This document shows positions 1 through 46,783 of a stretch of DNA of 64,000 nucleotides, in pieces. The stretch is taken from positions 16,847,469-16,911,468 of the forward strand of contig OZ199838.1 of NCBI GenBank assembly GCA_964304625.1, in the 5' to 3' direction. This stretch comes from Kudoa neothunni (Eukaryota > Animalia > Cnidaria). The position numbers and the translations under genes were made by a program. How positions within the stretch are numbered: position 1 is the first letter of the stretch; every line of letters begins with the position of its first letter. The notes beneath the pieces were generated by a model. The model saw nothing but the letters and a program-made list of their open reading frames with translations. It was not told where the DNA came from and did not search any database.

Positions 1-919
1 AAATAACCATTTTTGGTTATGGTTATTTTCGTGATGATATCGATTACAAAATTAAAAATTTACAAAATATCGGACCATTACTTATCCTTTGCAAATGTAC
101 ATGCGGAGATAATGTGGGTGTGATTCCGCGTAAAGATACGGGTGATGGTTACCAGTCTAGATGAAACAAATGCCATAAAAGGTGCTTATTGAGGTTTGGG
201 ACCATTTTCGAAATGTCAAAGTTCCCCTTGTGGAAATCGTTTATCAAGCATCCAACTACGACATTTGATTAGGTTCGACAACACCTTGATATCACGTCAA
301 ATTCAACCATAATGGATTGGAAGACTATTATAAGAGATTTCATGACTTCCAAATTGAATGATAAATTCACAAAAATTGGAAGTGATGGAATAATTGTTCA
401 AATTGACTTGACCACGATCTCGAAGAAGAAATATAATATTGGCCGTGTTATGAAAAATCAGCAACATTGGACGGTGGGTGGAATTGACGAAGAAGAGAAC
501 TGCTTCCTAACGATTTCTCAATACAGAAACCGAGACGTTATTGAGAGAATAATAATCGATAACGTGGGAGACGGTTCAACAACAATATGGACGGATACAA
601 AAATTTGGAAAATTTAGGTTTTTTTCATGGAACCGTTGTCCACAAAAGGAGGTTTGTTTCGAGTGATGGAGTTCACACAAACAAAATAGAGGCGACTTGG
701 GGTACTTTTAAAAGGAATTATATAAACGCCACAAACAAGAATCCAGAGAGTTTACCTGGGTATATAACAGATTTTTGTTTAGAAAAAAATGTGTCGAAAC
801 AGAAATTAGTGCTCTCTTTGTATATATTTTGACGTTTAATTCACTTTAAAAACTATATGCTAAGTTTACCGATGTTTGGTTTTTTCCGACGAAGTTTTTA
901 CAGATTCTGTAATATAGCC
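1..919 (+). mobile_element. Merlin/ISXO2-like (IS1016-type DDE) DNA transposon, degenerate, truncated by window start
   Basis: KIGSDGIIVQID, WTVGGID, TIWTD(G), VHTNKIEATWGTFKR motifs split by a frameshift; right TIR ending ..gtaatatagcc at 919. Confidence 0.8.
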
Positions 920-1336: not shown

Positions 1337-4212
1337 ATGATTTTATTTTATTCATTGATTATTTACTCTTGTAAGAAGAATATACGTATTAACCTAGTTA
1401 TTTGTATTTAGTCATACATAGCTGTATCAATACTGAAGTGTCGACTACAGCGCGTGAAGTTTATTATCAAATAGATCGTTCGGATGCTGACGCCTGGAAA
1501 ATGCATGTTGAACTAAAAGGTTTGGAATATACTACCGAAAAAAAATGTCGCATAATGAGAGAGAATACTGCTGGGAACAATTTTGAAGATTTTACGGGGT
1601 GCGTAAGTACAGAGGCTAATATATCTGATAAATGCATAAGAGCTTGTGCGGGCAGTGATAACCAACTAGACTATTCTAAGATGTCTCCGAGGTCAAAATA
1701 TATTTATGTAAAAGATGGAGCAGATGCAGATAATCTTAAAACTGAGGCAAATAAAAAAGGTGGAAAGGTTTATGGTTTTGAAATACGTACGATTAAATTT
1801 TTATTATGGTTTTTATGTTTATTTAGCACTATTGGTTGATCCTGATATAAAGGCTTCAACAGATACTTCACAATTATTGATGCTGAAAGCGATCACTTGC
1901 AAACCAGTGGCATGTCCAATTTACTATAAAAATGTTTTATACAAGAATGTTCCTGCGGGAGAGAAAGCTGTATAGCACAAGCTAGTGAAGCTGGCGTCAG
2001 TTCAGTTGATTATGGAGCAAGAGTTCCGTACTATGAAGTGCGTTGCATTAATTATCCAATATTCTATTACCATATGCCCAATCATTATATGAGAAAGGAA
2101 ATTGATATTTATAATCCACAGTTTTATGTTAAATACAAGTCTGCCAGTGAAAAAACTCAATATCATCTTAAATTCACTAACGCTTTTCCTAGTGAAATAT
2201 GTCTGTTCCAAATAAGAGATGCAACTGATAATGTGAATACAGGTCAAAATAAATATCAATCAAAATGCGGAGGAGGAACAGAAAAAAAGTGTTACGCCCT
2301 TTGCAATGACGTCGAACTCACTCTAACTTCTACTAAACCTATTGTTGACATTTTAATTCAAACAAGGCACAATCAATTGGAGAAAAAAAGTGATGACACA
2401 TTTGAAGGGCATACGTTTAAAAAATTTGGTAAAAATATTATTTTAAATTTATTTTAATGCCTTTTAGCTGTCATCGAGCAAGCGGAAGATGCTAGCGCAC
2501 TTATATCTTCTATTACAAGCACTGGCGTCAATATCAATGTTCCACTACTTGCACCATCCACCGAAGGTGCCACTAAATTTAATCAGTGTGCAATCAAATA
2601 CTACGTTGCAGATAGAATTAAAAATACCCCATTAACTGACGCGAAGTGCTCATCCAACAAATGTGTAGATACTTGTGGCGCTGTCTTTACAGTTCAAGAA
2701 TTGCCTGAAGGGAAACCTATTATGTTTGAAATATCCCCTACTATAATACAAGGATACACCAATTTCAAAGAATATCTATTTATTAAAACTCGTAATATGT
2801 AAATATGGCACCATTTTATTCATATGTGGTAGTTAAAAAGGATGGACAAAATTTTAATTCCGAAAAGCCAACAATGGGGGAAACGACAGCTATAGTAAAA
2901 GCAATTCAAGGCAATCCCGAAGCAGAAACCATGCCGGTGTGTGATTATTTTATAAGTAAAACTAATGAAATCTCATTCGTGGAAGCGACATGCCTTGATA
3001 GAAAACCCTGCGGAGGATTGTGTAAAGAGGTTAAGACGCTAGTGGAACTTGAACCAAACACATCCTACAACATCAAGATAGTCGCATACGCGGATTATGG
3101 TTCTATTGTACATGAGAATCTCCAAACGAGTAAAAATAAAAATTTCTGTTTCTTTTTTATAGTATAATAGCATTTTCAAGACTCACTCTCTCAGAAGAAA
3201 AACGAGACAGAGGTTTTAAAGTTGTAGGAACATTGTCAACACCAATGAGTGATGCAATGTGTCATTACAAAATAAATGCGAAAAATGGAGAAACTTGGGA
3301 TCCTGTTTATACTTGTATTGAAAATAAGGAAAACCCCACATTATCTTCATTATTAAATGTCATTGCCAGAACCGGTACAGGGAATCAACCGTCTATATCT
3401 AACGATACTTCTGTTAAATCATGTACGGAAGTACCGCTGTGTAAAAGTATTGTATTCAGTGATTATTATGATGCTTCGAAGGAATATCAAGTTTTGGTAA
3501 CAGCTGTAGGTAGATCTCGTGAGGAAACAATTATTATAAAACCAAGTATTTTCTAAAAATTATTAATATTATTTTTATATTTTATAATTATTAGTAATCA
3601 TTAAAATATTTTTTGTTCCGAATATAATAGAAACTTTATAATTTAGAATTGTTACCGGAAACTCCCTCAGATGTAACCAAAACAATATTAGTTTTTATTG
3701 TCCGTGAGGGTACTACATTGAAAGTAACAACCACACTCCCAGAAGGTAAAAACGAGAAATCCACTTGTAAATGGAAATTGATTAATTCTAACGATCTTGC
3801 AAAACCAACAATTAAGAAGTGCACTCAAATTACTGGTGAAGATTGCACAGTATTCCCAAGTTGCAAAGAATTTACAATCGAAAATGTAGTAGATACAACA
3901 AATTACCACTTGACTGTTTATCACAGTCAGGATGAAACAGTATTAGGAACAGCTGAAATAGATCAAGGTATCAATAATTATTTATACAATTTCTATTTAC
4001 TAAATTATAGGCGCAACTGGGAGTAAATCGACGTAAATTATAATATTTGTTTATTTAGACTATAAGATTATTTAGATCAGGAAACACTACAATGTAAAAT
4101 GTGAAAGGACGGATTTTTAATTTTTATTTTTAGTATCATAGTCTCTGTTGTAGTTGCAATAGTAGCTATCGTAGGAATAGGAGCTTTTATGGTATACAGA
4201 AAAAATAAATAA
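1337..4212 (+). pseudogene. Surface-protein family copy A (10 exons; signal peptide, Cys/FN3-like modules, TM), with one 2-nt frameshift in exon 3
   Basis: ATG 1337 MILFYSLIIYS|FIHSCINT after a 41-nt GT-AG intron; nine GT-AG introns at the same positions as in paralogs; micro-exons GATGSKST/SGNTTI; last exon IIVSVVVAIVAIVGIGAFMVYRKNK*. At ~1958-1966 GGAGAGAAAGC has 2 extra nt versus copy A' (GGAGCAAGC), giving TAG at 1973-1975. Could be an assembly error. Confidence 0.8.
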
Positions 4213-12593: not shown

Positions 12594-15492
12594 ATGAGGA
12601 TTTCACTTTATCAACTGGGAGTACTTTTGCTTGCTATATGTAACTAGGAATATTTATTTGCGGTTAAATTGAATAAAGTATAGTCAAATGTACTTCTATG
12701 GTTGCATCTGACCCTGAAGCTCAAGTCCCACCTCTTACGAATGAACTCAGATATCAAATAGTAGAAGATAATAATGAAAAGAAACTTCAACTTATATTGA
12801 GCGGAAGCACATACAGCGAAGAAAGTTACTGTCAGATTAAAAAGTCGAATGATGTAGCTACAGAATATCAAGTTATAGATTCATGCCCTGAAACAGATCC
12901 AAATAATGGTCAAAATAAATGTGTTAGAAAATGTTTGGGAAATGGCAATAAGCTGGGACTTGATAAATTTTCCCCAAGAACGAAATATATTGTTGTTTTT
13001 AAAGGGGAAAATCCTGCAAACGCCGCTGGGAAAAGCAATGGGGGAACTGTATTTGGACTCGAGTTACGTAATAAATGATTAATAAAAATTCTTCAAACCG
13101 AATTGTTTTTAGGATTACTTGTCAATCCAAAGGTCGCTGTGACCACTACAGCAGATAGTAAATTAAAGTTGAGCACAAAAACTTGCCCACCAGTCAAATG
13201 TCCTATATACTACAAAGGAGTCGAATATGTAGCTACTACGCAAGGTACTAACTGCGATACCGCCAATAATTCAAACGAAGTTGAATTTGATTTAATGATA
13301 CCTCATTACGAAATGAAATGTGAAAATTATCCAAGTTTCTTTTATAAGCTTCAAAATGATTACACTCTATCGAAAATTGATGTTTACAAACCACAATATT
13401 ATGTAGCTTACGCTTCGGCTCAGAAAAATAAATATTCACTTAAGTTCACGAATAAATTTCCTTTCGAAATATGTCGCTTTAGTATTAGAGATGGGGAAAC
13501 CCAAGCTAATGCTGATGAAACTGCAAAATATTATGTATCAAATTGTGGTGGGGAAGATAAACCGTGCATTGCTCCTTGCAATAATGTAGAGCTTACTTTC
13601 ACTGAATCGAAGACAATATTAGAAGTGTTGATACAAACAAGACACTTTCCACTAGAAAAAGTCAACGATGAATATAAAGGTTATACACAAAAGAAATTCG
13701 GTACGAATTTAACATTTAAATATTTAATTATGCTCGGATAGTTTTCACAGAAACTACTTCAGAAAATGGTTTATTAATACCTGCTATAACACATGATACT
13801 GCTTCTTTAAATGTGCCCCTTTTTAAACCTGATTCAAACCCTAAATTTACAAGTTGTATCGTCACCCATTTCGCTGCTGATAAACCATTGTCTACAACTA
13901 ATGCAGGGGCCACAAAGTGTAGAGTAAGCAACGAAAGTTGTTCCAATGACTGTACTTCAGCCTTAGTAATAAAAGAACTTTCCAGTGGAAAGCCATACAT
14001 TCTTGTAATAACACCTGGACCTGCAGGTACGGGTGGCGTACCGGAAAATTTCAAAGAACATATATTCATTAGGACTGGTATAATAATTGATAAATATGTT
14101 GTGTATAATAAATATGTAGAAAAAGCCACAGGCTCAACATTCCCTGCCATAACACCAATAATAGATGAGACAACGGCGGTGATTACAGCCCTTACAGGAG
14201 GTGGAACAATCGCAAAAGAAGACGTAACGTGTGCATATTATATCAGCCCTCGCGGAAAGGATATATATGTATGTGCAATGTGCATTGATAGTTATCCTTG
14301 CCGAGGTTTTTGCAAAGAAACTAAACAAATTGTTGGTTTAACTCCAGGAACTGAATACGATCTTAAGATAGTTGCTCACAAAGAGTATGGATTCAAAGAG
14401 CATCAAATAAAAACACGTATGAAATAATTGAATGATAAAAAATGATTAAATTCATAGTAATGTCAAAGCTGACACTTAAAAAACAATTTACGGACAAAGG
14501 TTTCAAAGTGGTGGGTTCGTTGTCGACACCAGATCCCTTCGCTCTATGCAGCTACAAAGTTAAAGTTAAAAAGGGGAAAAATTTTGAGTTGATCCACGAA
14601 TGTCCAGCTACTCCACCCCAAACAGTAGCAACTCCAAGCAAGCCTAAAAACATACCAAAGGTTTCTAAAATTGAGGTTGCTAGATCAGCTGCTGATCGAA
14701 AACCTACATCCAACCCTGAAAATAACACTGTCACGACAACATCATGCACTGAATTACCTACATGTTCCGAAATAATATATACTAATCTTTACGATCGTTC
14801 CAAAAAATACCAGATGTTGGTAACTGCCGTTGGTGGTCGTTCAGAGGAAATCACTATTGATATCCCTGAAAGTAATTCGATTTTAATAATACTTCTAACG
14901 AAATTATTTTCATTAATTTTTAATATATTAGATAATTTTTCAATAAGTGAACATGTCAACAAAAAAGTAATCATTGGCATAGAACGCGAAGGGAACAAGC
15001 TTAAAGTTACAGCTCTACTTCGGAGCGATGCCCCGGAAAGCACATGTGGTTGGGAGTTACGTAACTCTTCAGAAGATGGAAAGAGTTTGGTAAAATCGTG
15101 TAACGGTGCCAATGACAGTGGTTGTGAAACCCTTCCATTATGTAAGGGTTTTGAAATTCTTAACATAGAAGATACTAGTGATTATCATCTCACTGTATAT
15201 GTGAGCAGTGATCCAACAATAATCGGTCATGCGATAATCAAGCAAGGTAAACAAAATAGTTACTAAATTTGATAAAATATTTTTAGGTGAATCTCACGAT
15301 ACAATGAAATCAACGTAAGTTGTGTAAGTTTTTTCATTTTTAATATTAATTTAGATCAAAAAATACCATGTATTTTTAATTACGTTTAATTATGTTTGAT
15401 TATTATTCCTTAGAATTATAGCTTCGGCAGTAGCAGGAGTCGTAGTCGTTGCTATTGGAATCGGAGTGATTATTATGAAAAGAAAGAATTGA
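12594..15492 (+). CDS. Surface-protein family copy B1, 833 aa type-I membrane protein
   Basis: Hand-spliced exons 12594-12639, 12684-13067, 13113-13700, 13742-14077, 14120-14416, 14458-14871, 14932-15246, 15287-15314, 15355-15369, 15414-15492. Total 2502 nt, open frame, all GT-AG. Signal peptide MRISLYQLGVLLLAIFKCTS; C-terminus IIIASAVAGVVVVAIGIGVIIMKRKN*. Confidence 0.9.
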
Positions 15493-15554
15493 ATACCACT
15501 CATTACATTATTATGAATTTTTTTTTAATTTTATATCTTATTTTTACAACATTA

Positions 15555-17738
15555 GCAGACACTGTCCATTTGTTCGTGTTCGTGTTCGCTTTTATTTACA
15601 TTATGTCAAACTTGAGTGTGGAAACTGTTGAAGAGGCTTTGAAAGCTAGGAGACTTTGCTCTTAGCAATAATCTACATCGCATTCTAAAGAATGGGACGA
15701 TTTTTGTACCATCTTTACTAAAGACGGAGTTGAAACATCCTAAATTTATTTTATTGTTTGCACAAGGTGCAACAAAACATTTCCGCATAAATCTTCTTAC
15801 GAGAATAGGAAACTTATTAGTCATAATAAATTACATACTCAACCAAATAATGATATAAAAATTAGTGAAATATTTGTTTCACCTCCCTCTATTGTTGATT
15901 TAAGCTTGTCAAATCTGGTAATGTTTGACACAAAAATTGCTAATTGTGTAGTTGAAACAATCTCTTCTTTTTCAATAACGGAAAGTGCATCATTTACTGA
16001 GATGATAAACTTCGCATTTTTCTTAAACAGAAAGTTCAGTGAACCTAATGCTAGGCTTAAATTTTTATCAAAAAAATGCGTTAAAAAATTACTATGAATA
16101 AGTATGAGCCTAAACGTTGATATTTGAACTGATAATGCTAAAATCAACTCATTCATTGATATATCAGTGTTATTTGTTAAAAATTTCACCCTTCAACATT
16201 TTCAATACGACATGATCTATTTTCCTGTAAAACGCATTGCAAAAAATATAAATAAAATCTGCACGGAATTTTGTAGTAAATTTTAACTTAACAAATCTGA
16301 TCTAAGAATTGTTTATGATTCCGCAGAAAACAATCTACGGGGTCTAAGAGAGTTTAACACAACCAGATGTACAGCTCACCACCTTAACACTATTATATCT
16401 CAAGGTATTTTATGTATTAAATTGATGTTAAAGTGATATACTTAACGATATGCTATCTTAATCTCTCATACTTATTTTTGGTAAATCAAGATAAAACTGT
16501 TATAATCTAAATTTAAATAATTTATTTTTATCTATTTTAATATATTGATTATATGTTTTTATCACAAATAAATTTATAAATAAATTTTGCTTTTGCTATA
16601 ATATCTAATTTCGACTTGTTTATTGTGTAGCTTAGGATCTCAGCACAAGCGGCACATCCGGTTTATCCGTACTAAGGGTGATTGTTGACAAACTGTGCGG
16701 ATCTGTTCATAAAACAGCTGATTTACAGTCCATTATATTTTCAGTGAAAATACAATGGGGCTCAGCTACGCGACCATGGAGAGGTCTCTGCGATCGATAT
16801 AGAACGTTAGTGGCGTGTTTCGATAATTCGAAGGGTGTGATAGAGAATCATCCAGCTAAAAAGTACTTTGATGGATTGGACAAGAACGAATGTGTTGTTG
16901 TAGTTGAATTTTTCAAAATATTTTCCGATTTCTGTGATCAGTTGGAGCGGGTGAAGGTACCATCGTCACATGATGAAATTCGTTTAAGTTTCGTGTTTTA
17001 TATTATCGTTAGGTTTTTATTGTATTTCATCGTATCAAAGCAATGATTAAAAAGCCACATAAAAATCTTACGGGCGATTATTGCATGCATTTGGAAAGTT
17101 TATTGGACGAAAAAGACACACAATATATTGATATCAACCATAAAATCGCGGCTTTTCTCCACCCAAATTTTAAAAAATTCAAATTTATTGTGTAGATCTG
17201 CGAAATAAAGAATTAAATTTCGTGATAAACCACGTTGAGTCGTTTTTTCTGGCATAGCTGAACCAAATTATCTACTTAAAAAAGAATTTGACGGTAAATC
17301 ATTGCTTTTAACAAACATTGAAAAAAATTAGACTTAATCCCAAAGAACCCCATCCTTTGAAAAACCACTCAATATGTTATGAACTGGATAGTGACTCAGA
17401 AGATTTTCAATCAGAAATTCAACTGTACATCCGAGAAAAAGTCAACAAAGTTTACGAAAATCCGCTCGTTTATTGGGAAAACTCAAAGACAGAAAATCTT
17501 AAAAAATTGCAACTAACGTGTACAGCCGACCAGCGTCCAGCTCAATGTCAGAACGGACGTTTTCATACGCTGGAAAAATTTTATTCATGCTAGATATAGA
17601 TTTGAACCAAACACGTTAAGAAAATTAGTAGTTCATACTAATAATATTAAAAATAAGACACTTCTGGAATAAATTTAATTCACTCCTCTTTATTATGTGT
17701 TATTTTGCATTATCTCAAAAGCAAACTGAACAGGCCTA
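15555..17738 (+). mobile_element. Degenerate hAT transposon directly downstream of B1 (copies 31122-33305 and ~58405-62630)
   Basis: Fragments CDSAEN, RCAAHHLNTII, IAAFLHP, NPLVYWENS and S.SERTFSYAG (hAT dimerisation domain) with many stops; right end ..GAACAGGCCTA. Confidence 0.75.
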
Positions 17739-17744
17739 ACTTAG

Positions 17745-22778: not shown

Positions 22779-25700
22779 ATGAAAATAGCTGGATTTATCT
22801 ACCTTGCTTTAGGCATCTTTCTGAGTTAATTTTAATACTAACGTAAGTTTAGGTGTTTTAGTATCAAGCAAAGCAAATGTTAATGGAAGTCCACGTCCTC
22901 CTACTACACTTGCAGTTACACCTCCAACGAAAACACTGAAATACCAGATTTTGAAAGGTTCGGGTGCTGACCAAGACAAAATTAAACTCAATCTTGGAGG
23001 TTCTGATTATGGAAATGGCCAAAAGTGTCATATAATGCGATCTAACGAAGCAGAGATTACAGTGGATACTAGTAATGCATTACCAGCTGCGTTTGCAGAA
23101 ATCGATACCTGCACTGCCAACGTTATCGAGACTGGGGTTGAAGTTAGTAATAAATGTGTTGTCAACTGTGACACTACTACGAATACTATTAATTACAAAA
23201 AGCTGTCACCAAGAACCAAATACATATATGTCTTCGTCGGCGCTAGCGCAGCTAATGTTAAAGACCAAGTTAAAGGAGCAGGATCAAAAGTATTCGGATA
23301 CTCAATACGTAAATCCGTTTTATTTAATATAAAAATAAATTGAATTTAGCTTTATTGGTTAATCCGCAAATTAGAGTGTCTAAGGACACTACCGACAATG
23401 ATAAGCTGAAATTAGCAGCAATAACATGTGCCCGTGTAGATTGCCCTATTTATTATAAAGATATTAAATATGTAGATGGTACCAAGGGGGCAGATTGTAT
23501 TACTGAGACTTCAGCAAATAAAGTTGATTTTGATTTATTGTTACCGCATTACGAAATGAGGTGCGAAAATTATCCCAGTTTCTTTTACAATATGCCTAAT
23601 CAATATATGAAGGAAAAAATAGCCATCTACGAGCCTCAGTTTTATATTGTAGACAAAACTGAAGGTAAAGTCGGAATTAAATTCACCAATTCTCTATCAT
23701 CTGAAATATGTCTATTCAGCCTTAAAAATGCCTTAACTGAAACCGAGGGTCAATCATATACGTCTGCTTGTGGTGGTACTGATAAAAGATGTTATGCTCC
23801 TTGTAAGTACGTCGAACTTAATGGCATTAGGGGTAAAAAATTTTACAATATTTTGATTCAAACCAGACATCACGACATAAAAGCTACTGGAGATAGTTTG
23901 GATGGTTACAAACAAACTAAATTTGGTACTTCTTATATTAACACGCATTATTTATTATTTTCGTTAGCAATTACTGAACCAGCTGGAGGATTGCTTTCTG
24001 CTTACACTGAGGCTGGTGTTTCGTTTGATGGTACCCCATTTAAAGAAAATACTAATCCACAATTTTCGACATGTACTCTCAAACACTATTTTGCAAACAA
24101 AATCACACCAGGATCTCCAACAGAGACAACGTGCGACGCTAGCAGTTCCAGTAATGGTTCAGATGGTAACCAATGCAAAACTGATTGCACAACAAAATTG
24201 GTGATTAAACAACTTACAGCGGGAAAAGCCTACATGATTGAAATCACATTTACAAGTACCAATACTATTCCAAATAATTTCAAAGAACATATATTCATAA
24301 GAACAAGTAAATCATTATATTTATTTTATAAAATAATGAATTATAAAGATAATGGAAATGGTAAAGCATATGGAGCTACTGATCCTACGAAGACAGACAC
24401 GACAGTCTCTCTTACAGCTATAGCTGTCACCACAACTGAAGCAGATCAAAAGAAAGAAGAACCTACCTGTGAGTATTTGGTAAGTCCGGCTGGATTGGAC
24501 AGCTTTTTCCACGCGAAATGCAATGGCAATACCCCATGTAGAGGAATTTGCAGTGAACAAATTACGATAGAAGACCTTGAGCCAAACGAACCTTATGACA
24601 TCAGGGTGATCGCGGATAAGGATTACGGCATAAAAGATTACACAAATATACGAACAAGTTATTGAAGTTATAATTTACTCTTTAAATTTTTAATAGCATT
24701 GACAACATTAACGATAACACACAAGATCACATTGGATGGTTTGTCATTGAGGGCACGATTAAATTCTTTGGATCCAAGTGCAACTTGCAGTTATACCATA
24801 AAAAAGAAGACTGGTAACGATTACACAGACTATTACACATGTCCAGAGGTGCCGAAAGTAACGACACCTGTTTCCCCTCCAGTAGCACCAACACCCCCTT
24901 CGGCTCCTACTTCCAGATTAAGTTCTGCAGATCTCAACATAGCTAGAATTGCTCTACCAATGGTAACAGATGGTGGTCTAATCCCAACAGCGAAATCTTC
25001 AGTTCCAGATATTTCAGATACACAGCTTGCTGATGTCGCTAACAACATAAACCAATGCTCATCAAATCCGCTTTGCAATTCCATAATATTTCCCGAGTAT
25101 GAAGCAATAAATTCATACAAAATTGTAGTCACAGCTATCGGAAAATCTTCAGAAAAAGAGCATATCGTAGAATCAAGTACTACAATTAACGCTTCGATGA
25201 ACGATACTATTAAGAATTTCTTAAACGAATCTTACATTAGGTGCACCACAAGTAAACCCAACTGACTCCTCAAAATTGATATCAGTCGTCATTACACGTG
25301 ATGGGAACAATTTCATTGTAACCACCACACTTCCAGCTGGCATGAACGATGAATCAAAATGCAAATGGGAGTTACGTAACAGTAGTGTCAAGTCTAATGC
25401 AGTAGTAAGATCTTGCATGAGAAGAAACGTGGACAGATGTGCTGCTTTTGTGACCTGTAAAGAATTCAAAATAAATAATTTACCTGATGGAAATAACTAT
25501 TATTTGACTGTTTACAGTGCTCAAGATGATACAATTTTTGGCGGTGTTGACATACAACAAGGTATATTATTTGTTCACAATGTAATTTAATGTTATATAT
25601 CGTAGGAGCAAAGAGTAGTTCAGGGTGAGCTAAGTAATATTTTTTTATTTAATTTAATATTTTTTAGGGATAAAACCAAACTTATGTAAACAATTATAAT

Positions 25701-30749: not shown

Positions 30750-33700
30750 ATAATAGAGATTGCACGTGGTTTCGATATCGCACGAAGCTGATTTTTTGTG
30801 AAATTTGTTGAGGAAATTTTAAGCTTATTTCTGAATTTTAATACGTAGATGAATGCATATAATTAAGATTTTTACCTTAATTTACTGGAATTTTTGAGCT
30901 ATGTTACCTCATATGTCATAATTTCATATTTTATTACCAAATAAAAATTTGGTATCAGTGTTTTTTTCAAAGATAATTAAATTGATTTAGGAAACAGAAC
31001 CTTTCTATATAAGTTACGCTATAGTCAAATCTGTCTAAACATTTTTTTAGAATGACAAAAATACTTTCCAACCCTAATTTTATGTCTAATAATTAGAAGT
31101 GAATTTTTTAAGTGGCTAAGTTAGGCCTGTTCAGTTTGCTTTTGAGATAATGCAAAATAACACATAATAAAGAGGAGTGAATTAAATTTATTCCAGAAGT
31201 GTCTTATTTTTAATATTATTAGTATGAACTACTAATTTTCTTAACGTGTTTGGTTCAAATCTATATCTAGCATGAATAAAATTTTTCCAGCGTATGAAAA
31301 CGTCCGTTCTGACATTGAGCTGGACGCTGGTCGGCTGTACACGTTAGTTGCAATTTTTTAAGATTTTCTGTCTTTGAGTTTTCCCAATAAACGAGCGGAT
31401 TTTCGTAAACTTTGTTGACTTTTTCTCGGATGTACAGTTGAATTTCTGATTGAAAATCTTCTGAGTCACTATCCAGTTCATAACATATTGAGTGGTTTTT
31501 CAAAGGATGGGGTTCTTTGGGATTAAGTCTAATTTTTTTCAATGTTTGTTAAAAGCAATGATTTACCGTCAAATTCTTTTTTAAGTAGATAATTTGGTTC
31601 AGCTATGCCAGAAAAAACGACTCAACGTGGTTTATCACGAAATTTAATTCTTTATTTCGCAGATCTACACAATAAATTTGAATTTTTTAAAATTTGGGTG
31701 GAGAAAAGCCGCGATTTTATGGTTGATATCAATATATTGTGTGTCTTTTTCGTCCAATAAACTTTCCAAATGCATGCAATAATCGCCCGTAAGATTTTTA
31801 TGTGGCTTTTTAATCATTGCTTTGATACGATGAAATACAATAAAAACCTAACGATAATATAAAACACGAAACTTAAACGAATTTCATCATGTGACGATGG
31901 TACCTTCACCCGCTCCAACTGATCACAGAAATCGGAAAATATTTTGAAAAATTCAACTACAACAACACATTCGTTCTTGTCCAATCCATCAAAGTACTTT
32001 TTAGCTGGATGATTCTCTATCACACCCTTCGAATTATCGAAACACGCCACTAACGTTCTATATCGATCGCAGAGACCTCTCCATGGTCGCGTAGCTGAGC
32101 CCCATTGTATTTTCACTGAAAATATAATGGACTGTAAATCAGCTGTTTTATGAACAGATCCGCACAGTTTGTCAACAATCACCCTTAGTACGGATAAACC
32201 GGATGTGCCGCTTGTGCTGAGATCCTAAGCTACACAATAAACAAGTCGAAATTAGATATTATAGCAAAAGCAAAATTTATTTATAAATTTATTTGTGATA
32301 AAAACATATAATCAATATATTAAAATAGATAAAAATAAATTATTTAAATTTAGATTATAACAGTTTTATCTTGATTTACCAAAAATAAGTATGAGAGATT
32401 AAGATAGCATATCGTTAAGTATATCACTTTAACATCAATTTAATACATAAAATACCTTGAGATATAATAGTGTTAAGGTGGTGAGCTGTACATCTGGTTG
32501 TGTTAAACTCTCTTAGACCCCGTAGATTGTTTTCTGCGGAATCATAAACAATTCTTAGATCAGATTTGTTAAGTTAAAATTTACTACAAAATTCCGTGCA
32601 GATTTTATTTATATTTTTTGCAATGCGTTTTACAGGAAAATAGATCATGTCGTATTGAAAATGTTGAAGGGTGAAATTTTTAACAAATAACACTGATATA
32701 TCAATGAATGAGTTGATTTTAGCATTATCAGTTCAAATATCAACGTTTAGGCTCATACTTATTCATAGTAATTTTTTAACGCATTTTTTTGATAAAAATT
32801 TAAGCCTAGCATTAGGTTCACTGAACTTTCTGTTTAAGAAAAATGCGAAGTTTATCATCTCAGTAAATGATGCACTTTCCGTTATTGAAAAAGAAGAGAT
32901 TGTTTCAACTACACAATTAGCAATTTTTGTGTCAAACATTACCAGATTTGACAAGCTTAAATCAACAATAGAGGGAGGTGAAACAAATATTTCACTAATT
33001 TTTATATCATTATTTGGTTGAGTATGTAATTTATTATGACTAATAAGTTTCCTATTCTCGTAAGAAGATTTATGCGGAAATGTTTTGTTGCACCTTGTGC
33101 AAACAATAAAATAAATTTAGGATGTTTCAACTCCGTCTTTAGTAAAGATGGTACAAAAATCGTCCCATTCTTTAGAATGCGATGTAGATTATTGCTAAGA
33201 GCAAAGTCTCCTAGCTTTCAAAGCCTCTTCAACAGTTTCCACACTCAAGTTTGACATAATGTAAATAAAAGCGAACACGAACACGAACAAATGGACAGTG
33301 TCTGCTAATGTTGTAAAAATAAGATATAAAATTAAAAAAAAATTCATAATAATGTAATGAGTGGTATTCAATTCTTTCTTTTCATAATAATCACTCCGAT
33401 TCCAATAGCAACGACTACGACTCCTGCTACTGCCGAAGCTATAATTCTAAGGAATAATAATCAAACATAATTAAACGTAATTAAAAATACATGGTATTTT
33501 TTGATCTAAATTAATATTAAAAATGAAAAAACTTACACAACTTACGTTGATTTCATTGTATCGTGAGATTCACCTAAAAATATTTTATCAAATTTAGTAA
33601 CTATTTTGTTTACCTTGCTTGATTATCGCATGACCGATTATTGTTGGATCACTGCTCACATATACAGTGAGATGATAATCACTAGTATCTTCTATGTTAA

Positions 33701-36700
33701 GAATTTCAAAACCCTTACATAATGGAAGGGTTTCACAACCACTGTCATTGGCACCGTTACACGATTTTACCAAACTCTTTCCATCTTCTGAAGAGTTACG
33801 TAACTCCCAACCACATGTGCTTTCCGGGGCATCGCTCCGAAGTAGAGCTGTAACTTTAAGCTTGTTCCCTTCGCGTTCTATGCCAATGATTACTTTTTTG
33901 TTGACATGTTCACTTATTGAAAAATTATCTAATATATTAAAAATTAATGAAAATAATTTCGTTAGAAGTATTATTAAAATCGAATTACTTTCAGGGATAT
34001 CAATAGTGATTTCCTCTGAACGACCACCAACGGCAGTTACCAACATCTGGTATTTTTTGGAACGATCGTAAAGATTAGTATATATTATTTCGGAACATGT
34101 AGGTAATTCAGTGCATGATGTTGTCGTGACAGTGTTATTTTCAGGGTTGGATGTAGGTTTTCGATCAGCAGCTGATCTAGCAACCTCAATTTTAGAAACC
34201 TTTGGTATGTTTTTAGGCTTGCTTGGAGTTGCTACTGTTTGGGGTGGAGTAGCTGGACATTCGTGGATCAACTCAAAATTTTTCCCCTTTTTAACTTTAA
34301 CTTTGTAGCTGCATAGAGCGAAGGGATCTGGTGTCGACAACGAACCCACCACTTTGAAACCTTTGTCCGTAAATTGTTTTTTAAGTGTCAGCTTTGACAT
34401 TACTATGAATTTAATCATTTTTTATCATTCAATTATTTCATACGTGTTTTTATTTGATGCTCTTTGAATCCATACTCTTTGTGAGCAACTATCTTAAGAT
34501 CGTATTCAGTTCCTGGAGTTAAACCAACAATTTGTTTAGTTTCTTTGCAAAAACCTCGGCAAGGATAACTATCAATGCACATTGCACATACATATATATC
34601 CTTTCCGCGAGGGCTGATATAATATGCACACGTTACGTCTTCTTTTGCGATTGTTCCACCTCCTGTAAGGGCTGTAATCACCGCCGTTGTCTCATCTATT
34701 ATTGGTGTTATGGCAGGGAATGTTGAGCCTGTGGCTTTTTCTACATATTTATTATACACAACATATTTATCAATTATTATACCAGTCCTAATGAATATAT
34801 GTTCTTTGAAATTTTCCGGTACGCCACCCGTACCATCTGCCCCAGGTGTTATTACAATAATGTATGGCTTCCCATTTGAAAGTTCTTTTATTACTAAGGC
34901 TGAAGTACAGTCATTAGAACAATTATCGTTATCTCCACATTTTGTTTCCCCGGTATTAGTAGGTGGTGGTTTGTCAGCAACGAAATGGGTGACAGTGCAA
35001 CTTGTAAATTTAGGATTTGAATCAGGTTTAAAGAGGCGCACATTTAAAGACAGATTTTCATGAGTTATGGCAGATATTAATTCACCATTGGCCGAAGTAG
35101 ATAAATTAACAACTATCCGAGCATAATTAAATATATAAATATTAAATTGTTACCGAATTTCGTTTGTGTATAACCTTCATATGCATTGTCGACTTTTTCT
35201 AGTGGAAAGTGTCTTGTTTGAATCAACACGTCTAATATTGTCTTTGATTCAGTAAAAGTAAGCTCTACATTATTGCAAGGAGCATAGCAAGGTTTTCCTT
35301 GTCCACCACAATTTGAAACATATTCGTTTGTAGTTCCTTCAGCATTAGCTTGGGATGACCCATCCCTAATACTAAAGCGACATATTTCGAAAGGAAATTT
35401 ATTCGTGAACTTAAGTGAATATTTATTTTTCTGAGCCGAAGCGTAAGCTACATAATATTGTGGTTTGTAAACATCAATTTTCGATAGAGTATAATTATTT
35501 TGAAGCTTATAAAAGAAACTTGGATAATTTTCACATTTCATTTCATAATAAGGTATCATTAAATCAAATTCTACTAAGTTTGATTCATTCGGGGTGGTGC
35601 AAGTACCTCCTTGCGTACCTGTCTTAAGCTCAACTCCTTTATAATATGCATGGCATTTAACTTGCGGACATGTGGTTGTGCTAAATTTCAATTTACTTTC
35701 TGCTGTAGTAGTCACAGCGACCTTTGGATTTGCAAGTAATCCTAAAAACATTTCAGTTTGAAGAATTTTTATTAATCATTTATTACGTAACTCGAGTCCA
35801 AATACAGTTCCTCCATTGCTTTTCCCAGCGGCGTCTGTAGCATCATTACCTTTAAAAACAACAATATATTTCGTTCTTGGTGAAAATTTATCAAATCCCA
35901 GCTTATTGTCACTTCCCAAGCATTTTCTAACACATTTATTTGGACCATTAGTTTTATCTGTTTCAGGACAAGGATTTATATCTTCATATAATGTAGCTCC
36001 ATCATTCGACTTTTTAATCTGGCAGTAACTTTCCCCGCTGTATGCGCTTCCGCTCAATATAAGTTGAACTTTCTTTTCATTATTATCTTCTACTATTTGA
36101 TATCTGAGTTCATTCGTAGGAGTTTGACCCTCAACTTGACCTTCCCCGACGGATACATTCTGAAAAGTGCATTTGACTATACTTTATTCAATTTAACCGC
36201 AAATAAATATTCCTAATTACATAGAGCAAGAAAAAATACTCCCAGTTGGAAAAGTGAACTCCTCATTATATTTTTTTATAATGTATAGACGAAAATATTC
36301 GTTATATTTAATAAATGCTTCAATCTAATTGAGTTTGGTAAATAGTATGAATGTTATTAACAATTTATAAGTAACAAACAATATAGGATTAAAAATAATA
36401 ATGTAGTTATTATTAAATTATAATTCTATTTTATAATCCCTACCAAAAAATGAATACTCACCATATCAATGAGTGTTTAGTTTACTTTTTTATACATTAT
36501 TTTTATAAAAAGTAATTTGATATTTTTTCCTTTAATAATAACATGTTTTTACTACTATTCATATGTATTTAAATTAGATAACTATTCGTACACCTAAACC
36601 ATGTGTAGATTAATTTTTCTAGAAATGGGTTCGGATATGAAATTTAGCTTAATACATTTATAACTTATATTTAATTAGTTATCATATATATATATATATA

Positions 36701-41900: not shown

Positions 41901-44900
41901 GCGTAATATCCAGAATAATATTTTATTCAAATATATATTATTTATAAAATAAAATAATATTAGTTTTTCAAATGCGTGGATAGTTTCTATTCATGCATAT
42001 TACTGAAGAATCTCAAAAGTATTTTGAATAAAAAATGTAAACCTTTGAAAAATATATATTTATTTGAAAACAAATGATTACTTATTAGTCTAAAATAAAG
42101 CTAGTATAAAAGAACTGTAATAAGATTATTCAAAAATTATGAAGTGATATTTGTGTTATGAAAATAGAAACTGATTAGTTTATTATCTTAATAAAAAAGG
42201 GGAATTAAAAGTTTACACTCATCAATCTTTGAGTAAATTTATAGTTATTTGTATCATATAATAAATATAAAAAACATGTTTGTTATTTTTTTGTTTTAAT
42301 AATATAAAATTACTCAGGAAAAATTAAAATAAAGTAAATAATTGTGAAAACTTCTTTATAATTCTGGAAAAAAGTTGACTTTATTTAAAAATGCTCACTT
42401 TATTTAAAATAAACCCCACCATTAAATTGATGACACATAAAAATTGAGATAAATCAGAAAAATTTCTATCTAATATGATTAATATGAATGTTAATGTATG
42501 TTTTTATTTATTTTTTCTGTATACCATAAAAGCTCCTATTCCTACGATAGCTACTATTGCAACCACAACAGAGACTATGATACTAAAAATAAAAATTAAA
42601 AATCCATCCTTTCACATTTTACATTGTAGTGTTTCCTGATCTAAATAATATTATAGTCTAAATAAACAAACATTATAATTTACGTCGATTTACTTCCAGT
42701 TGCGCCTATAATTTAGTAAATAGAAATTGTATAAATAATTATTGATACCTTGATCTATTTCAGCTGTTCCTAATACTGTTTCATCCTGACTGTGATAAAC
42801 AGTCAAATGGTAATTTGTTGTATCTACTACATTTTCGATTGTAAATTCTTTGCAACTTGGGAATACTGTGCAATCTTCACCAGTAATTTGAGTGCATTTC
42901 TTAATTGTTGGTTTTGCAAGATCGTTTGAATTAATCAGTTTCCATTTACAAGTGGATTTCTCGTTTTTACCTTCCGGGAGTTTGGTTGTTACTTTCAATA
43001 TGGTACCCTCACGGACAATAAAAACTAATATTGTTTTGGTTACATCAGAGGGAGTTTCCGGTAACAACTCTAAATTATAAAGTTTCTGTTATATTCGAAA
43101 CGAAAAATATTTTAAGAATTACTAGTAATTATAAAATATAAAAATAATATTAATATTAATTTTTAGAAAATACTTGGTTTTATAATAATTGTTTCCTCCC
43201 GAGATCTACCTACAGCTGTTACCAAAACTTGATATTCCTTGGAAGCATCATAATAATCACTGAATACAATACTTCTACACAGCGGTACTTCCGTACATGA
43301 TTTAACAGAAGTATCGTTAGGTATAGACGGCTGATTCCCTGTACCGGTTCTGGCAATGACATTTAATAATGATGATAATGTGGGGTTTTCCTTATTTTCA
43401 ATACAAGTATAAACAGGATCCCAAGTTTCTCCACTTTTCACATTTATTTTGTAATGACACATTGCATCACTCATTGGTGTTGACAATGTTCCTACAACTT
43501 TAAAACCTCTGTCTCGTTTTTCTTCTGAGAGAGTGAGTCTTGAAAATGCTATTATACTATAAAAAAGAAACAGAAATTTTTATTTTTACTCGTTTGGAGA
43601 TTCTCATGTACAATAGAACCATAATCCGCGTATGCGACTATCTTGATGTTGTAGGATGTGTTTGGTTCAAGTTCCACTAGCGTCTTAACCTCTTTACACA
43701 ATCCTCCGCAGGGTTTTCTATCAAGGCATGTCGCTTCCACGAATGAGATTTCATTAGTTTTACTTATAAAATAATCACACACCGGCATGGTTTCTGCTTC
43801 GGGATTGCCTTGAATTGCTTTTACTATAGCTGTCGTTTCCCCCATTGTTGGCTTTTCGGAATTAAAATTTTGTCCATCCTTTTTAACTACCACATATGAA
43901 TAAAATGGTGCCATATTTACATATTACGAGTTTTAATAAATAGATATTCCTTAAAACCGGCGTGGTTATCTATATTTTGAGGAGATATTTCAAATATAAT
44001 AGGTTTTCCTTCAGGTAATTCTTGAACTGTAAAGACAGCGCCACAAGTATCTACACATTTGTCGGATGAGCATTTCGCGTCAGTTAATGGGGTATTTTTA
44101 ATTCTATCTGCAACGTAGTATTTGATTGCACACTGATCAAATTTAGTGGCACCTTCGGTGGATGGTGCAAGTAGTGGAACATTGATATTGACGCCAGTGC
44201 TTGTAATGGAAGATATAAGTGCGCTAGCATCTTCCGCTTGCTCGATGACAGCTAAAAGGCATTAAAATAAATTTAAAATAATATTTTTACCAAATTTTTT
44301 AAACGTATGCCCTTCAAATGTGTCATCACTTTTTTTCTCCAATTGATTGTGCCTTGTTTGAATTAAAATGTCAACAATAGGTTTAGTAGAAGTTAGAGTG
44401 AGTTCGACGTCATTGCAAAGGGCGTAACACTTTTTGCTTGTTCCTCCTCCGCAGTTCGATTGATATTCATTTTGACCTCCAGCATTACTTGCTGCATCCC
44501 TTATTTTGAACAGGCATATTTCACTAGGAAAAGCGTTCGTGAATTTAAGATGATATTGAGTTTTTGCATTAGCAGACTTGTATTTAACATAAAACTGTGG
44601 ATTATAAATATCAATTTCCTTTCTCATATAATGATTTGGCATATGGTAATAGAATATTGGATAATTAATGCAACGCACTTCATAGTACGGAACTCTTGCT
44701 CCATAATCAACCAAATTGACGCCATTTCCATCAGCTTGTGCTATACAGCTTGCTCCCGCAAGGACATTCTTGTATAGAACATTTTTATAATAAATTGGAC
44801 ATGCCACTGGTTTGCAAGTGATCGCTTTCAGCATCAATAATTGTGAATTATCTGTTGAAGCCTTTATATCAGGATCAACCAATAGTGCTAAATAGATATA

Positions 44901-46783
44901 AAAAACATAATAAAAATTCAATCATACGTATTTCAAAACCATAAACCTTTCCACCTTTTTTATGTTCTTCATTTTTAAGATTATTTGCATCTGATCCATC
45001 TTTTACATAAATATATTTTGACCTTGGAGATATCTTAGAATAGTCTAGTTGGTTATCACTGCCCCCACAAGCTCTTATGCATTTATCAGATATACCATCC
45101 TGTGTACTTACGCACCCCGTAAAATCTTCAAAGTTGTTCCCAGCAATATTCTCTCTCATTATGCGACATTTTTTATCGGTAGTATAGTCCGAACCTTTTA
45201 GTTCAACATGAATTTTCCAAGTGTTAACATCTGAACGAACTATTTTATAATAAACTTCACGCGCTGTAGTTGACACTTCGGTATTGATACAGCTATATAT
45301 GGCTAAAAACAAATAACTAGGTTAATATGTATATTCTTCTTACAAGAGTAAATGATCATTGAATAAAATAAAATCATTTTTTGATTCTTCGAGGAAATAT
45401 CTTACCGATGGTTAATCTGATATTGTCTATAAAGAATAATTCTCGCGTATTATACGGTATTCATGCCTTTCAATAAAGTTAAATTGATTTTTAGTTAAAA
45501 TTAAATATAAATAATGCTATATTAAGAAAATAATACAATTTCTAATTATAATCTCATAATGATATATAAGAAATGCTATTGATCTTCTAACTCTTGCGAC
45601 AATCACCACAATTCATAATTTAAAGCCACAACAAAACATGTTTAATCTTATAGGAATTGAATAAATTATTATTTTGCCAGAAAGCATAATTAAGAATTTT
45701 TATAACATAACTAATTTAATATTTGTCGGAATAATTGGCAAAAATATATACAAATATAATTTTTCATAATTTATCTTCAAAAATCAATTAACACAGTTTG
45801 GATCAGTTGATATAATCGAGTGCAAAATTATTGATTATCTAAAAAAATAAAATTCAATTAAATTTTTGGCTATATTACAGAATCTGTAAAAACTTCGTCG
45901 GAAAAAACCAAACATCGGTAAACTTAGCATATAGTTTTTAAAGTAAATTAAACGTCAAAATATATACAAAGAGAGCACTAATTTCCATTTCAACAAACTT
46001 TCTTCTAAACAATAAATCGATTATATACCCAAGAAAACTCTCCGGATTCTTATTTGTGGCGTTTATATAATTCCTTTTAAAAGTACCCCAAGTCGCCTCT
46101 ATTTTGTTTGTGTGAACTCCATCACTCGAAAAAATCTCCTTTTGTGGACAACGGTTCCATGAAAAAAACCTAAATTTTCCAAATTTTTGTATCCGTCCAT
46201 ATTGTTGTTGAACCGTCTCCCACGTTATCGATTATTATTCTCTCAATAACGTCTCGGTTTCTGTATTGAGAAATCGTTAGGAAGCAGTTCTCTTCTTCGT
46301 CAATTCCACCCACCGTCCAATGTTGCTGATTTTTCATAACACGGCCAATATTATATTTCTTCTTCGAGATCGTGGTCAAGTCAATTTGAACAATTATTCC
46401 ATCACTTCCAATTTTTGTGAATTTATCATTCAATTTGGAAGTCATGAAATCTCTTATAATAGTCTTCCAATCCATTATGGTTGAATTTGACGTGATATCA
46501 AGGTGTTGTCGAACCTAATCAAATGTCGTAGTTGGATGCTTGATAAACGATTTCCACAAGGGGAACTTTGACATTTCGAAAATGGTCCCAAACCTCAATA
46601 AGCACCTTTTATGGCATTTGTTACATCTAATCTGGTAACCATCGCCCGTATCTTTACGCGGAACCACACTCACACTATCTCCGCTCGTACATTGGCAAAA
46701 GCTATGTAATAGTCCGATATTTTGTAAATTTTAAATTTTGTAATCGATATCACGAAAATAGCCATAACCAAAAATGGTTATTT
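39000..46783 (-). repeat. Outer right arm of large inverted duplication (pairs with 1-~7700)
   Basis: Reverse-complement match to 1-7700, alternating identical and clearly diverged patches. Confidence 0.93.
42504..45377 (-). CDS. Surface-protein family copy A' (intact inverted partner of A)
   Basis: ATG 45377 MILFYSMIIYS..; exon 3 open across the site frameshifted in A (ORF 44262-44921); same TM exon ending YRKNK*. Confidence 0.9.

What the first reader, a model, noticed from the sequence alone, without database searches (positions are those of the whole stretch)
12684..14077. Hypervariable inter-cysteine loops confined to membrane-distal modules, in both subfamilies
Seen: differences cluster in the same loops. 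B: CPETDPNNGQNKC / CPETDKTNGPNKC / CPGTESPSGNNKC; TQGTNCDTANNSNE / TQGGTCTTPNESNL / TQGGDCNAANNLNE; KPLSTTNAGATKCRVSNESC / KPPPTNTGETKCGDNDNC. A vs A': QIDRSDADAWKM / KIVRSDVNTWKI (6 replaced codons, 1 purely silent), STEANIS / STQDGIS, DATDNVNTGQNKY / DAASNAGGQNEY. Exons 5-10 are far more similar and the Cys scaffold is fixed. Inference: CDR-like loops on a constant frame under diversifying selection from host immunity or partner recognition.
Basis: partly seen in the sequence, partly recalled or inferred. Interest (0 to 1): 0.85.

Follow-up and report, generated by a model that had tools for sequence, protein, structure and literature searches.

The report
Variable loops in parasite surface-protein genes
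In a huge, undescribed family of surface-protein genes of a tuna-muscle parasite (Kudoa neothunni), neighbouring copies really do differ mainly in a few loops, but those loops drift roughly neutrally and the "constant" membrane-near half is simply being overwritten by copying between neighbouring genes, so selection for diversity is not shown.

Summary
Window 12684-14077 is exactly exons 2-4 of an intact 833-aa type I membrane protein (gene B1) built from about seven disulphide-bearing FN3-like modules. All quoted peptides are present. Differences between copies fall in columns that are also variable in 21 distant paralogs (p = 7.5e-13) and lie off the predicted beta strands.

dN/dS in the loops does not exceed 1:
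- Independently defined variable class: 0.32-0.71 by pairwise ML.
- Partition-wise M1a/M2a test: 2dlnL = 3.55, not significant.

The near-identity of exons 5-10 among local B copies reflects paralog gene conversion. Silent sites and introns are homogenised too, B1 and B2 are 100% identical over 3,815 nt, and identical tracts switch partners (permutation p <= 0.0005). In deep B comparisons and family-wide, membrane-proximal loops are as variable as distal ones. The A/A' pair does show a real distal excess of replacements (pN/pS 1.4, not significantly different from 1).

The genome is Kudoa neothunni. The family has at least 150 copies (454 candidates), and I found no description of it. Earlier follow-ups of this scan had already noted the family and its gene conversion on other DNA of this genome.

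The parts
12594..15492 (+). Gene B1. It has 10 exons and encodes an 833-aa type I membrane protein: signal peptide, about 7 FN3-like Cys-containing modules, a TM helix and a KRKN tail. Exons: 12594-12639, 12684-13067, 13113-13700, 13742-14077, 14120-14416, 14458-14871, 14932-15246, 15287-15314, 15355-15369, 15414-15492.
   Evidence: ORFs, GT..AG sites and phase-1 junctions were read. The same splice sites and an intact frame are present in B1-B5.
12884..12922 (+). Loop L1 in exon 2 (CPETDPNNGQNKC). It is the predicted C'-E loop of module 1.
   Evidence: It is variable in B1-B6 and in 21 distant paralogs.
13238..13279 (+). Loop L2 in exon 3 (TQGTNCDTANNSNE).
   Evidence: It lies in a long non-strand stretch, residues 40-54 of the exon 3 model.
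13490..13546 (+). Second hypervariable loop of exon 3 (DGETQANADETAKYYVSNC). B4 has a 4-codon deletion here.
   Evidence: It overlaps the lowest-confidence stretch (residues 128-139) of the AF2 model. B1 against B2/B3 shows 11 non-synonymous changes and 0-2.5 synonymous changes.
13882..13941 (+). Loop L3 in exon 4 (KPLSTTNAGATKCRVSNESC). It ends where the B1=B2 identical tract begins.
13930..17744 (+). A 3,815-nt tract that is 100% identical to B2 (31116-34930, minus strand). It covers the end of exon 4, exons 5-10 and about 2.2 kb of downstream non-family sequence.
   Evidence: Read-contig depth is about 15 in the B1-specific part and 26-30 in the shared part.
33368..36266 (-). Gene B2, an inverted paralog of B1. 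Exons 2-4 lie at 35787-36176, 35154-35741 and 34783-35112.
55443..58341 (+). Gene B3. Exons 2-4 lie at 55533-55922, 55968-56555 and 56597-56926.
1337..4211 (+). Gene A, of the second subfamily, with the same 10-exon plan. It has a 2-nt insertion at 1959-1960 relative to A' that shifts the frame in exon 3.
42505..45377 (-). Gene A', an intact inverted partner of A.
22951..25600 (+). A further family member (gene C) between the inverted arms. Exons 3-5 are read in one 441-aa open frame (23340-24662).

Best explanation
The region is the membrane-distal third (exons 2-4, four of about seven FN3-like beta-sandwich modules) of one member of a very large family of type I surface proteins. The family is lineage-specific to the myxozoan Kudoa neothunni.

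1. Each module has a strongly constrained frame: the strands, the cysteines, and motifs such as YPSFFY, KFTNKFPFEIC, CYAPC and LIQTRH. It also has a few surface loops under weak constraint. These loops take substitutions and in-frame indels at close to the neutral rate. The same loops therefore differ in every pair of copies and in both subfamilies.

2. Neighbouring copies exchange sequence by gene conversion. Tracts run from about 130 nt to 3.8 kb and switch partners along the gene. In the B1-B4 cluster they have recently overwritten the 3' half (exons 5-10, and for B1/B2/B3 also the downstream flank). This erased silent and intronic differences as well, which makes the distal part look uniquely variable.

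Inside the distal part, converted frameworks sit next to loops that keep older divergence at silent sites too. The loops are therefore old islands, not recent bursts of change.

What is shown:
- the gene model;
- purifying selection on the frame;
- loop omega at or below about 1;
- the mosaic tracts;
- the family size.

What is inferred:
- surface exposure;
- the loop assignment in three dimensions;
- that conversion tracts tend to stop at diverged loops;
- any role at the host interface.
For: Gene and family
- Six copies keep all splice sites, and five are intact at 830-833 aa.
- Exon 3 alone finds 150 scored hits out of 454 candidates, all with E < 1e-53.
- Module 1 has an AF2 pLDDT of 79 and pTM of 0.71. 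Its best structural neighbours are cytokine-receptor FN3 domains, at Z 6.5.
- The exon 3 model resembles tandem FN3 modules. Pfam gives only sub-threshold fn3 hits.

Selection
- Per-exon dN/dS is below 1 everywhere.
- Variable class defined on distant paralogs: 0.47-0.94 by NG86 and 0.32-0.71 by ML.
- Framework: 0.06-0.2.
- Partitioned M1a/M2a: 2dlnL = 3.55 for exons 2-4, with 35% of codons in a neutral class. For exons 5-7 it is 0.26, with 19% neutral.

Conversion
- Sliding identity is mosaic.
- B1-B4 are 99% identical at 13279-13428 but only 64-68% at 12691 and 12979.
- The longest identical runs are significant by permutation (p <= 0.0005) in 8 pairs over all polymorphic sites and in 6 pairs at silent sites.
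- dS in exons 5-7 is 0-0.29 among B1-B4, against 0.18-0.59 in exons 2-4. Deep pairs have equal dS in all exons.
- B1-B4 exon 3 framework residues 53-124 have 0 silent and 2 replacement differences. The flanking loops have 5.5/13.5 and 3/8.

No family-wide gradient
- Mean pairwise identity among distant paralogs by exon is 0.41, 0.56, 0.44, 0.50, 0.43 and 0.48.

Real paralogs
- Contig depth is 13-16 for B1-specific sequence, 9 for a B4-specific contig and 26-30 for shared tracts.
Against: - A/A' shows a real polarity in replacements that homogenisation does not explain. Silent divergence is similar in the two halves: pS is 0.09 in the distal variable class and 0.08 in the proximal one. Yet the distal variable class has 33 replacements against 6 silent changes (pN/pS 1.40), while the proximal variable class has 0 against 3.
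- Some short windows are replacement-rich. B1 against B2/B3 in exon 3 loop 2 has 11 against 0-2.5. The A/A' exon 4 patch has 12.7 against 2.3 in 10 codons.
- I found no donor copy for that patch in the assembly. Templated conversion is therefore not shown for it.
- Six B copies give little power to detect a few positively selected sites.
- Loop alignments contain indels.
- A class-average omega below 1 is also what old, selectively maintained variants would show.
- There is no RNA or protein evidence. Three RNA runs gave no reads.
Confidence: 0.68

Rival explanations
1. The loops are recognition surfaces under positive diversifying selection from host immunity or a partner molecule. New amino-acid variants are favoured, as in antibody CDR-like or parasite antigen loops.
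For: - Variation sits in exposed loops of a conserved frame.
- In module 1 the BC, C'E and FG loops vary most. In FN3 domains these lie together at the N-terminal pole.
- A/A' distal variable class has pN/pS of 1.40.
- Local windows show many replacements and few silent changes.
- M2a places 1.8% of codons at omega 4.5.
- The family is huge and sits in a parasite.
Against: - Loop omega is at or below 1 in every B comparison but one. It is significantly below 1 in five of ten pairs at the 0.05 level.
- M2a is not better than M1a (2dlnL = 3.55).
- A/A' at 1.40 does not differ from 1 (p = 0.41), and A carries a frameshift.
- Proximal loops are just as fast in deep comparisons.
- The A patch QIDRSDADAWKM lies in the A-B hairpin, at the opposite pole.
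- Kudoa plasmodia grow inside muscle fibres, where antibody pressure is doubtful (general knowledge of the genus, not tested).
Confidence: 0.15
2. Selection acts against homogenisation rather than for new mutations. Old, distinct loop versions are kept because copies that differ are useful. Conversion is free to homogenise frameworks and proximal modules.
For: - Frameworks are identical while adjacent loops keep old divergence, including silent differences.
- Polarity at silent sites recurs in independent pairs: B1-B4 and B5-B6 on another chromosome.
- Other first readers noted the same polarity in other clusters of this genome (unchecked).
Against: - The same pattern is expected without selection if mismatched loops stop heteroduplex extension.
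- Some tracts run straight through loops. B5-B6 are identical across exon 3 loop 1, and B2-B3 across exon 4 loop L3.
- There is no family-wide distal-proximal gradient.
Confidence: 0.12
3. Artefact. The inverted arms (A-B1 and B2-A') are two haplotypes of one locus wrongly joined in the assembly. On this view the 'paralogs' are alleles.
For: - The published assembly came from low-coverage reads of an infected fish and needed purging of haplotypic duplication (PMC12239612).
- The arms are 87-100% identical.
Against: - B1-specific contigs (depth 13-16) are not at half the depth of a B4-specific contig (depth 9). Shared tracts are at 26-30.
- B3, B4, B5 and B6 show the same mosaic patterns at other places and on another chromosome.
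- Inverted pairs are reported in many clusters of this genome.
- The dN/dS conclusions would hold for alleles as well.
Confidence: 0.05

Closest known systems
FN3 / cytokine-receptor-type beta-sandwich modules (Pfam fn3 PF00041; for example IFNAR1, IL-9Ra, IL-7Ra and common gamma chain ectodomains)
   Same: - Seven-strand sandwich of about 100 residues with intradomain disulphides.
- Tandem arrays in a type I membrane protein.
- Phase-1 introns between modules.
- Best structural neighbours of modules 1-3.
- Partial fn3 profile hit at the F-G end of exon 5.
   Different: - No module reaches Pfam's curated score.
- Structural scores are middling: Z 6.5 and TM about 0.3-0.4.
- The sequence motifs and Cys pattern are the family's own.
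- There is no WSXWS motif or other cytokine-receptor signature.
Expanded Cys-scaffold surface-protein families of parasites (Toxoplasma SRS/SAG1-related, Plasmodium 6-Cys s48/45, Eimeria SAG, Giardia VSP; VSP-like genes reported in the myxozoan Sphaerospora molnari, bioRxiv 10.64898/2026.02.11.705288)
   Same: - Large lineage-specific family.
- Signal peptide plus beta-rich, disulphide-fixed modules plus a membrane anchor.
- Conserved frame with variable loops.
- Clustered genes.
- The weak top Foldseek row for module 1 is a Pfs48/45 domain (E 0.056).
   Different: - No sequence relation was found.
- The modules are FN3-like, not SRS, 6-Cys or CXXC repeats.
- The organism is an animal (a cnidarian).
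- No evidence exists of surface display, of switching, or of one-at-a-time expression.
Paralog gene conversion in multigene families (concerted evolution; mosaic formation in VSG, var, Pneumocystis MSG, Anaplasma msp2 and Borrelia vlsE)
   Same: - Partner-switching identical tracts.
- Homogenised silent sites and introns.
- Inverted and tandem neighbours.
- Some broken copies among intact ones (A and B6).
   Different: - No expression site or donor-archive architecture is seen.
- Here conversion mainly removes diversity in the 3' half.
- It is not shown to create new expressed mosaics.

Membership tests
Pfam fn3 (PF00041) / FN3 fold | Profile match above the curated gathering score | tested here: not met
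   The best hits cover only the F-G end of exon 5. PF25059 scores 23.9 bits against a cut-off of 39. PF00041 scores 16.6 against 25 in B1 and 24.8 against 25 in gene C.
Pfam fn3 (PF00041) / FN3 fold | Seven-strand A-B-C-C'-E-F-G beta sandwich with solved FN3 domains as nearest structures | tested here: inconclusive
   The module 1 model has pLDDT 79 and seven main strands. Its nearest chains are cytokine-receptor FN3 domains at Z 5-6.5, below the level that is decisive. The exon 3 model has pLDDT 68 and matches tandem FN3 chains at Foldseek E 5e-4 but TM 0.3.
Loops under diversifying (positive) selection | dN/dS significantly above 1 at loop sites, allowing for recombination | tested here: not met
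Partitioned M1a/M2a gives 2dlnL = 3.55, not significant. A/A' gives 1.40, p = 0.41 against 1.
Loops under diversifying (positive) selection | Variable residues form one exposed surface | tested here: inconclusive
   Variation is off-strand. In module 1 it is mainly in the BC, C'E and FG loops plus the N-terminal tail, but also in the A-B turn and the C-C' loop.
Concerted evolution by paralog gene conversion | Identical tracts longer than chance that switch partners and include silent sites and introns | tested here: met
   Permutation p <= 0.0005 in 8 pairs over all sites and in 6 pairs at silent sites. Introns show 0 differences in the converted parts.
Variant surface antigen system (antigenic variation in the strict sense) | Surface expression, one or few copies expressed at a time, switching | not testable with these tools
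   Three RNA runs with the species label held no reads of this locus. The genome paper reports that very few host transcriptome reads map to the parasite (PMC12239612).

The most novel reading that the evidence does not exclude
The family is the variant surface coat or adhesin repertoire of Kudoa. On this reading, hundreds of FN3-like genes carry distal loop sets that are kept distinct by selection and reshuffled by segmental gene conversion. That would give a cnidarian parasite an antigen-diversification system analogous to those of protozoan parasites.
Probability: 0.12. Interest if true: 0.85.

Novelty: new member of a known kind. Interest (0 to 1): 0.45.

Why it matters
Myxozoans are poorly annotated animal parasites of fish. 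Antigenic variation has been reported in a few of them without a known molecular basis (stated in bioRxiv 10.64898/2026.02.11.705288).

A family of at least 150, and possibly about 450, intact type I FN3-like surface-protein genes would be a few per cent of a 40-Mb genome. It is absent from the papers I could search. It is therefore an obvious candidate for the host interface of Kudoa, a genus that spoils tuna and other fish and includes food-poisoning species.

For this particular finding the value is mainly corrective:
- The striking 'CDR-like' pattern can be produced by relaxed loops plus gene conversion.
- Selection for diversity should not be claimed without population or ortholog data.

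Tried and rejected
- RNA evidence. Three metatranscriptome runs with the species label gave zero reads on the locus. This is no test of expression or splicing.
- Nematode origin. I suspected it from the short AT-rich introns, but no cuticle-collagen domain was found (the control genomes did not ring either, so this is weak). The genome was then identified as Kudoa neothunni.
- Identification. It rests on exact agreement with the published assembly: 40.2 Mb, three chromosomes, GC 30.4% and an 18,219-bp mitochondrial contig, which equals the fourth contig here.
- Donor search. I looked for a donor of the dense A/A' exon 4 patch. None was found for either version.
- Genome-wide polarity test.
- Homolog search. 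The profile search of 1.84 billion proteins gave only 16 unnamed fragments from Logan and ENA assemblies. The two whose contigs I looked up come from one other sample, SRR31175926.
- Foldseek on module 1 found nothing at E <= 0.001.
- HyPhy and PAML are not installed. I wrote NG86, pairwise GY94 ML and a partitioned M1a/M2a in Python instead.
- Spliced proteins. I built spliced coding sequences inside scripts only for codon alignments. Exons were searched and folded one by one by reference.
Full report
WHAT IS THERE

The window is AT-rich eukaryotic DNA with introns of 40-100 nt. Region 12684-14077 is not an arbitrary stretch. Its ends are the acceptor of exon 2 and the donor of exon 4 of a ten-exon gene that I call B1.

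The B1 exons are:
- E1 12594-12639
- E2 12684-13067
- E3 13113-13700
- E4 13742-14077
- E5 14120-14416
- E6 14458-14871
- E7 14932-15246
- E8 15287-15314
- E9 15355-15369
- E10 15414-15492

I read this model from the open frames and GT..AG sites. The introns after exons 1-7 are in phase 1. The product has 833 residues: a signal peptide, six large extracellular exons, a transmembrane helix (ASAVAGVVVVAIGIGVII) and a four-residue tail.

Five relatives of 78-88% identity exist: B2 and B3 in the window, B4 just beyond it, and B5 and B6 on another chromosome. All six keep every splice site. Five are intact at 830-833 residues. B6 has a 1-nt deletion in exon 7.

A second subfamily, A and A', has the same plan. 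A carries a 2-nt insertion (1959-1960) relative to A' that breaks exon 3.

WHICH ORGANISM

The assembly has contigs of 17,154,348, 12,040,071 and 11,048,340 bases, plus a remainder of 18,219 bases. The published Kudoa neothunni assembly was recovered from yellowfin tuna reads. It has 40.2 Mb, three chromosomes, GC 30.4%, a median intron of 49 bp and an 18,219-bp mitochondrial contig (PMC12239612). The identity is therefore secure. That paper does not mention fibronectin or gene families.

THE FAMILY

Exon 3 alone finds 150 scored matches out of 454 candidates in this genome. All have E < 1e-53 and nearly all are open. Twenty distant members that I fetched share the colinear exon 2-7 plan.

Outside this genome, a profile search of 1.84 billion proteins found only 16 unnamed fragments. 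The two whose contigs I looked up come from one other sample. They are 20-48% identical and keep the frame motifs and cysteines.

Pfam gives only sub-threshold fn3 hits.

Structure:
- The AlphaFold model of module 1 (exon 2, 27 sequences) has pLDDT 79 and pTM 0.71 and is a seven-strand sandwich.
- Its nearest solved chains are cytokine-receptor FN3 domains at Z 5-6.5. This is suggestive but not decisive.
- The exon 3 model (pLDDT 68) looks like two tandem FN3 modules.

Exons were handled one by one by reference, and spliced coding sequences were built only inside scripts for codon alignment.

All quoted peptides are present. To avoid circularity I classed columns as variable, intermediate or conserved using only 21 distant paralogs.

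B1-B3 differ at 50%, 28% and 10% of these classes respectively (p = 7.5e-13). Variable positions are off-strand in both models (p = 6e-4 and 6e-6). In-frame indels occur only in such loops.

In module 1 the N-terminal tail and the BC, C'E and FG loops vary most. In FN3 domains those three loops share the N-terminal pole. The A-B turn and the C-C' loop vary too. The A/A' patch QIDRSDADAWKM aligns with the A-B hairpin.

I could not map a 3D patch because model coordinates are not exposed.

The cysteine scaffold is fixed at 29 of 31 columns. One Cys of exon 3 sits four residues away in B4-B6.

SELECTION

Whole-exon dN/dS is below 1 everywhere.

For the independently defined variable class of exons 2-4:
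- NG86 gives 0.47-0.94.
- Pairwise GY94 maximum likelihood gives 0.32-0.71. This is significantly below 1 in five of ten pairs at the 0.05 level.
- Frames are at 0.06-0.2.

I also ran an M1a/M2a test with a separate tree for each 50-codon partition:
- Exons 2-4: 2dlnL = 3.55 (df 2, not significant). 65% of codons are at omega 0.11 and 35% are neutral.
- Exons 5-7: 2dlnL = 0.26, with 19% of codons neutral.

The exception is A/A'. Its distal variable class has 33 replacements against 6 silent changes (pN/pS 1.40, p = 0.41 against 1). Its proximal variable class has none against 3, at similar silent divergence.

WHY EXONS 5-10 LOOK CONSTANT

B1 and B2 are 100% identical over 3,815 nt from 13930, through exon 10 and 2.2 kb of downstream sequence. 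Contig depth doubles there, so both copies are real.

Sliding identity is a mosaic:
- B1-B4 are 99% identical at 13279-13428 and 13579-13728, but 64-68% in exon 2.
- B2-B3 are 99% at 13729-14028.
- B5-B6 are 99% at 13129-13278.
- B3-B4 are 100% at 14329-14628.

The longest identical runs beat 2,000 permutations in eight pairs over all polymorphic sites and in six pairs at silent sites only.

Among B1-B4, dS and intron differences in exons 5-7 are 0-0.29, against 0.18-0.59 distally. In deep pairs (B1-4 against B5-6), dS is equal along the gene. There the proximal variable loops have omega 0.8-1.15, no slower than the distal ones.

Among distant paralogs, mean identity by exon is 0.41, 0.56, 0.44, 0.50, 0.43 and 0.48, so there is no gradient.

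Within exon 3 of B1-B4 the frame (72 codons) has no silent difference. The two flanking loops carry 5.5 and 3 silent differences as well as 13.5 and 8 replacements. The loops are older than the converted frame. They are not the product of fast change after conversion.

WHAT REMAINS OPEN

The data cannot tell whether loops escape conversion passively, because mismatches stop tracts, or because homogenised copies are selected against.

The dense A/A' patch in exon 4 has 15 nucleotide differences in 10 codons. No donor for it exists in the assembly.

Expression is untested.

Earlier follow-ups of this scan had already described the family as undescribed and had reported paralog gene conversion in it on other DNA of this genome. 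My results at this locus agree with them. They add that the loops are not demonstrably under positive selection.

Noticed in passing
window 1950-1965 (gene A exon 3), against A' at about 44750-44770: A has a 2-nt insertion (AG at 1959-1960) relative to A'. It shifts the frame inside the first hypervariable loop of exon 3. A is therefore either a fresh pseudogene or carries an assembly error. Its proximal exons still show purifying selection against A'.
   Followed up: partly
L011 (G000:C2:8548900-8555000), exon 7 of copy B6: A 1-nt deletion breaks the frame of B6. Two of the eight close copies examined are therefore broken.
   Followed up: partly
window 13169-13183 (exon 3, residues S20/C24 of the exon): One cysteine is relocated by four residues. 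B1-B3 read S...C, while B4-B6 read C...F and two distant members read C...W. This is an alternative disulphide register inside an otherwise fixed scaffold.
   Followed up: no
window 2728-2757 (A exon 4) against the matching part of A' exon 4 (43928-44251): A ten-codon patch (PTIIQGYTNF against PQNIDNHAGF) carries 15 nucleotide differences between otherwise 95-100% identical genes. No donor copy for either version was found in the assembly.
   Followed up: partly
window 15744-17744 and 31116-33116: About 2 kb of non-family open-frame fragments downstream of B1, B2 and B3 lies inside the 100% identical tract. Three fragments had no Pfam hit. One fragment ends in a motif that reminded me of hAT transposase C-termini, from memory only.
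   Followed up: no
window 563-829: An open frame upstream of gene A matches the ISXO2-like/IS1595 DDE transposase domain (PF12762, E 3e-6, just above the cut-off).
   Followed up: no
window 23340-24662 (gene C): Exons 3, 4 and 5 of this family member are read in one 441-aa open frame. The introns between them appear to be lost or in frame. Several other members have open frames of 330-445 aa around exon 3.
   Followed up: no
window 15247-15413: The path to the transmembrane exon needs two micro-exons of 28 and 15 nt between three 40-44-nt introns in my model. Other notes of the scan read this stretch in the family as nested twin introns. I did not test either reading.
   Followed up: no
L032, L033 (Logan contigs of SRR31175926): A different sample holds diverged members of the family (20-48% identity in exon 3), next to ordinary eukaryotic genes (SNF5, ribosomal protein S14). 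This is probably another myxozoan.
   Followed up: partly
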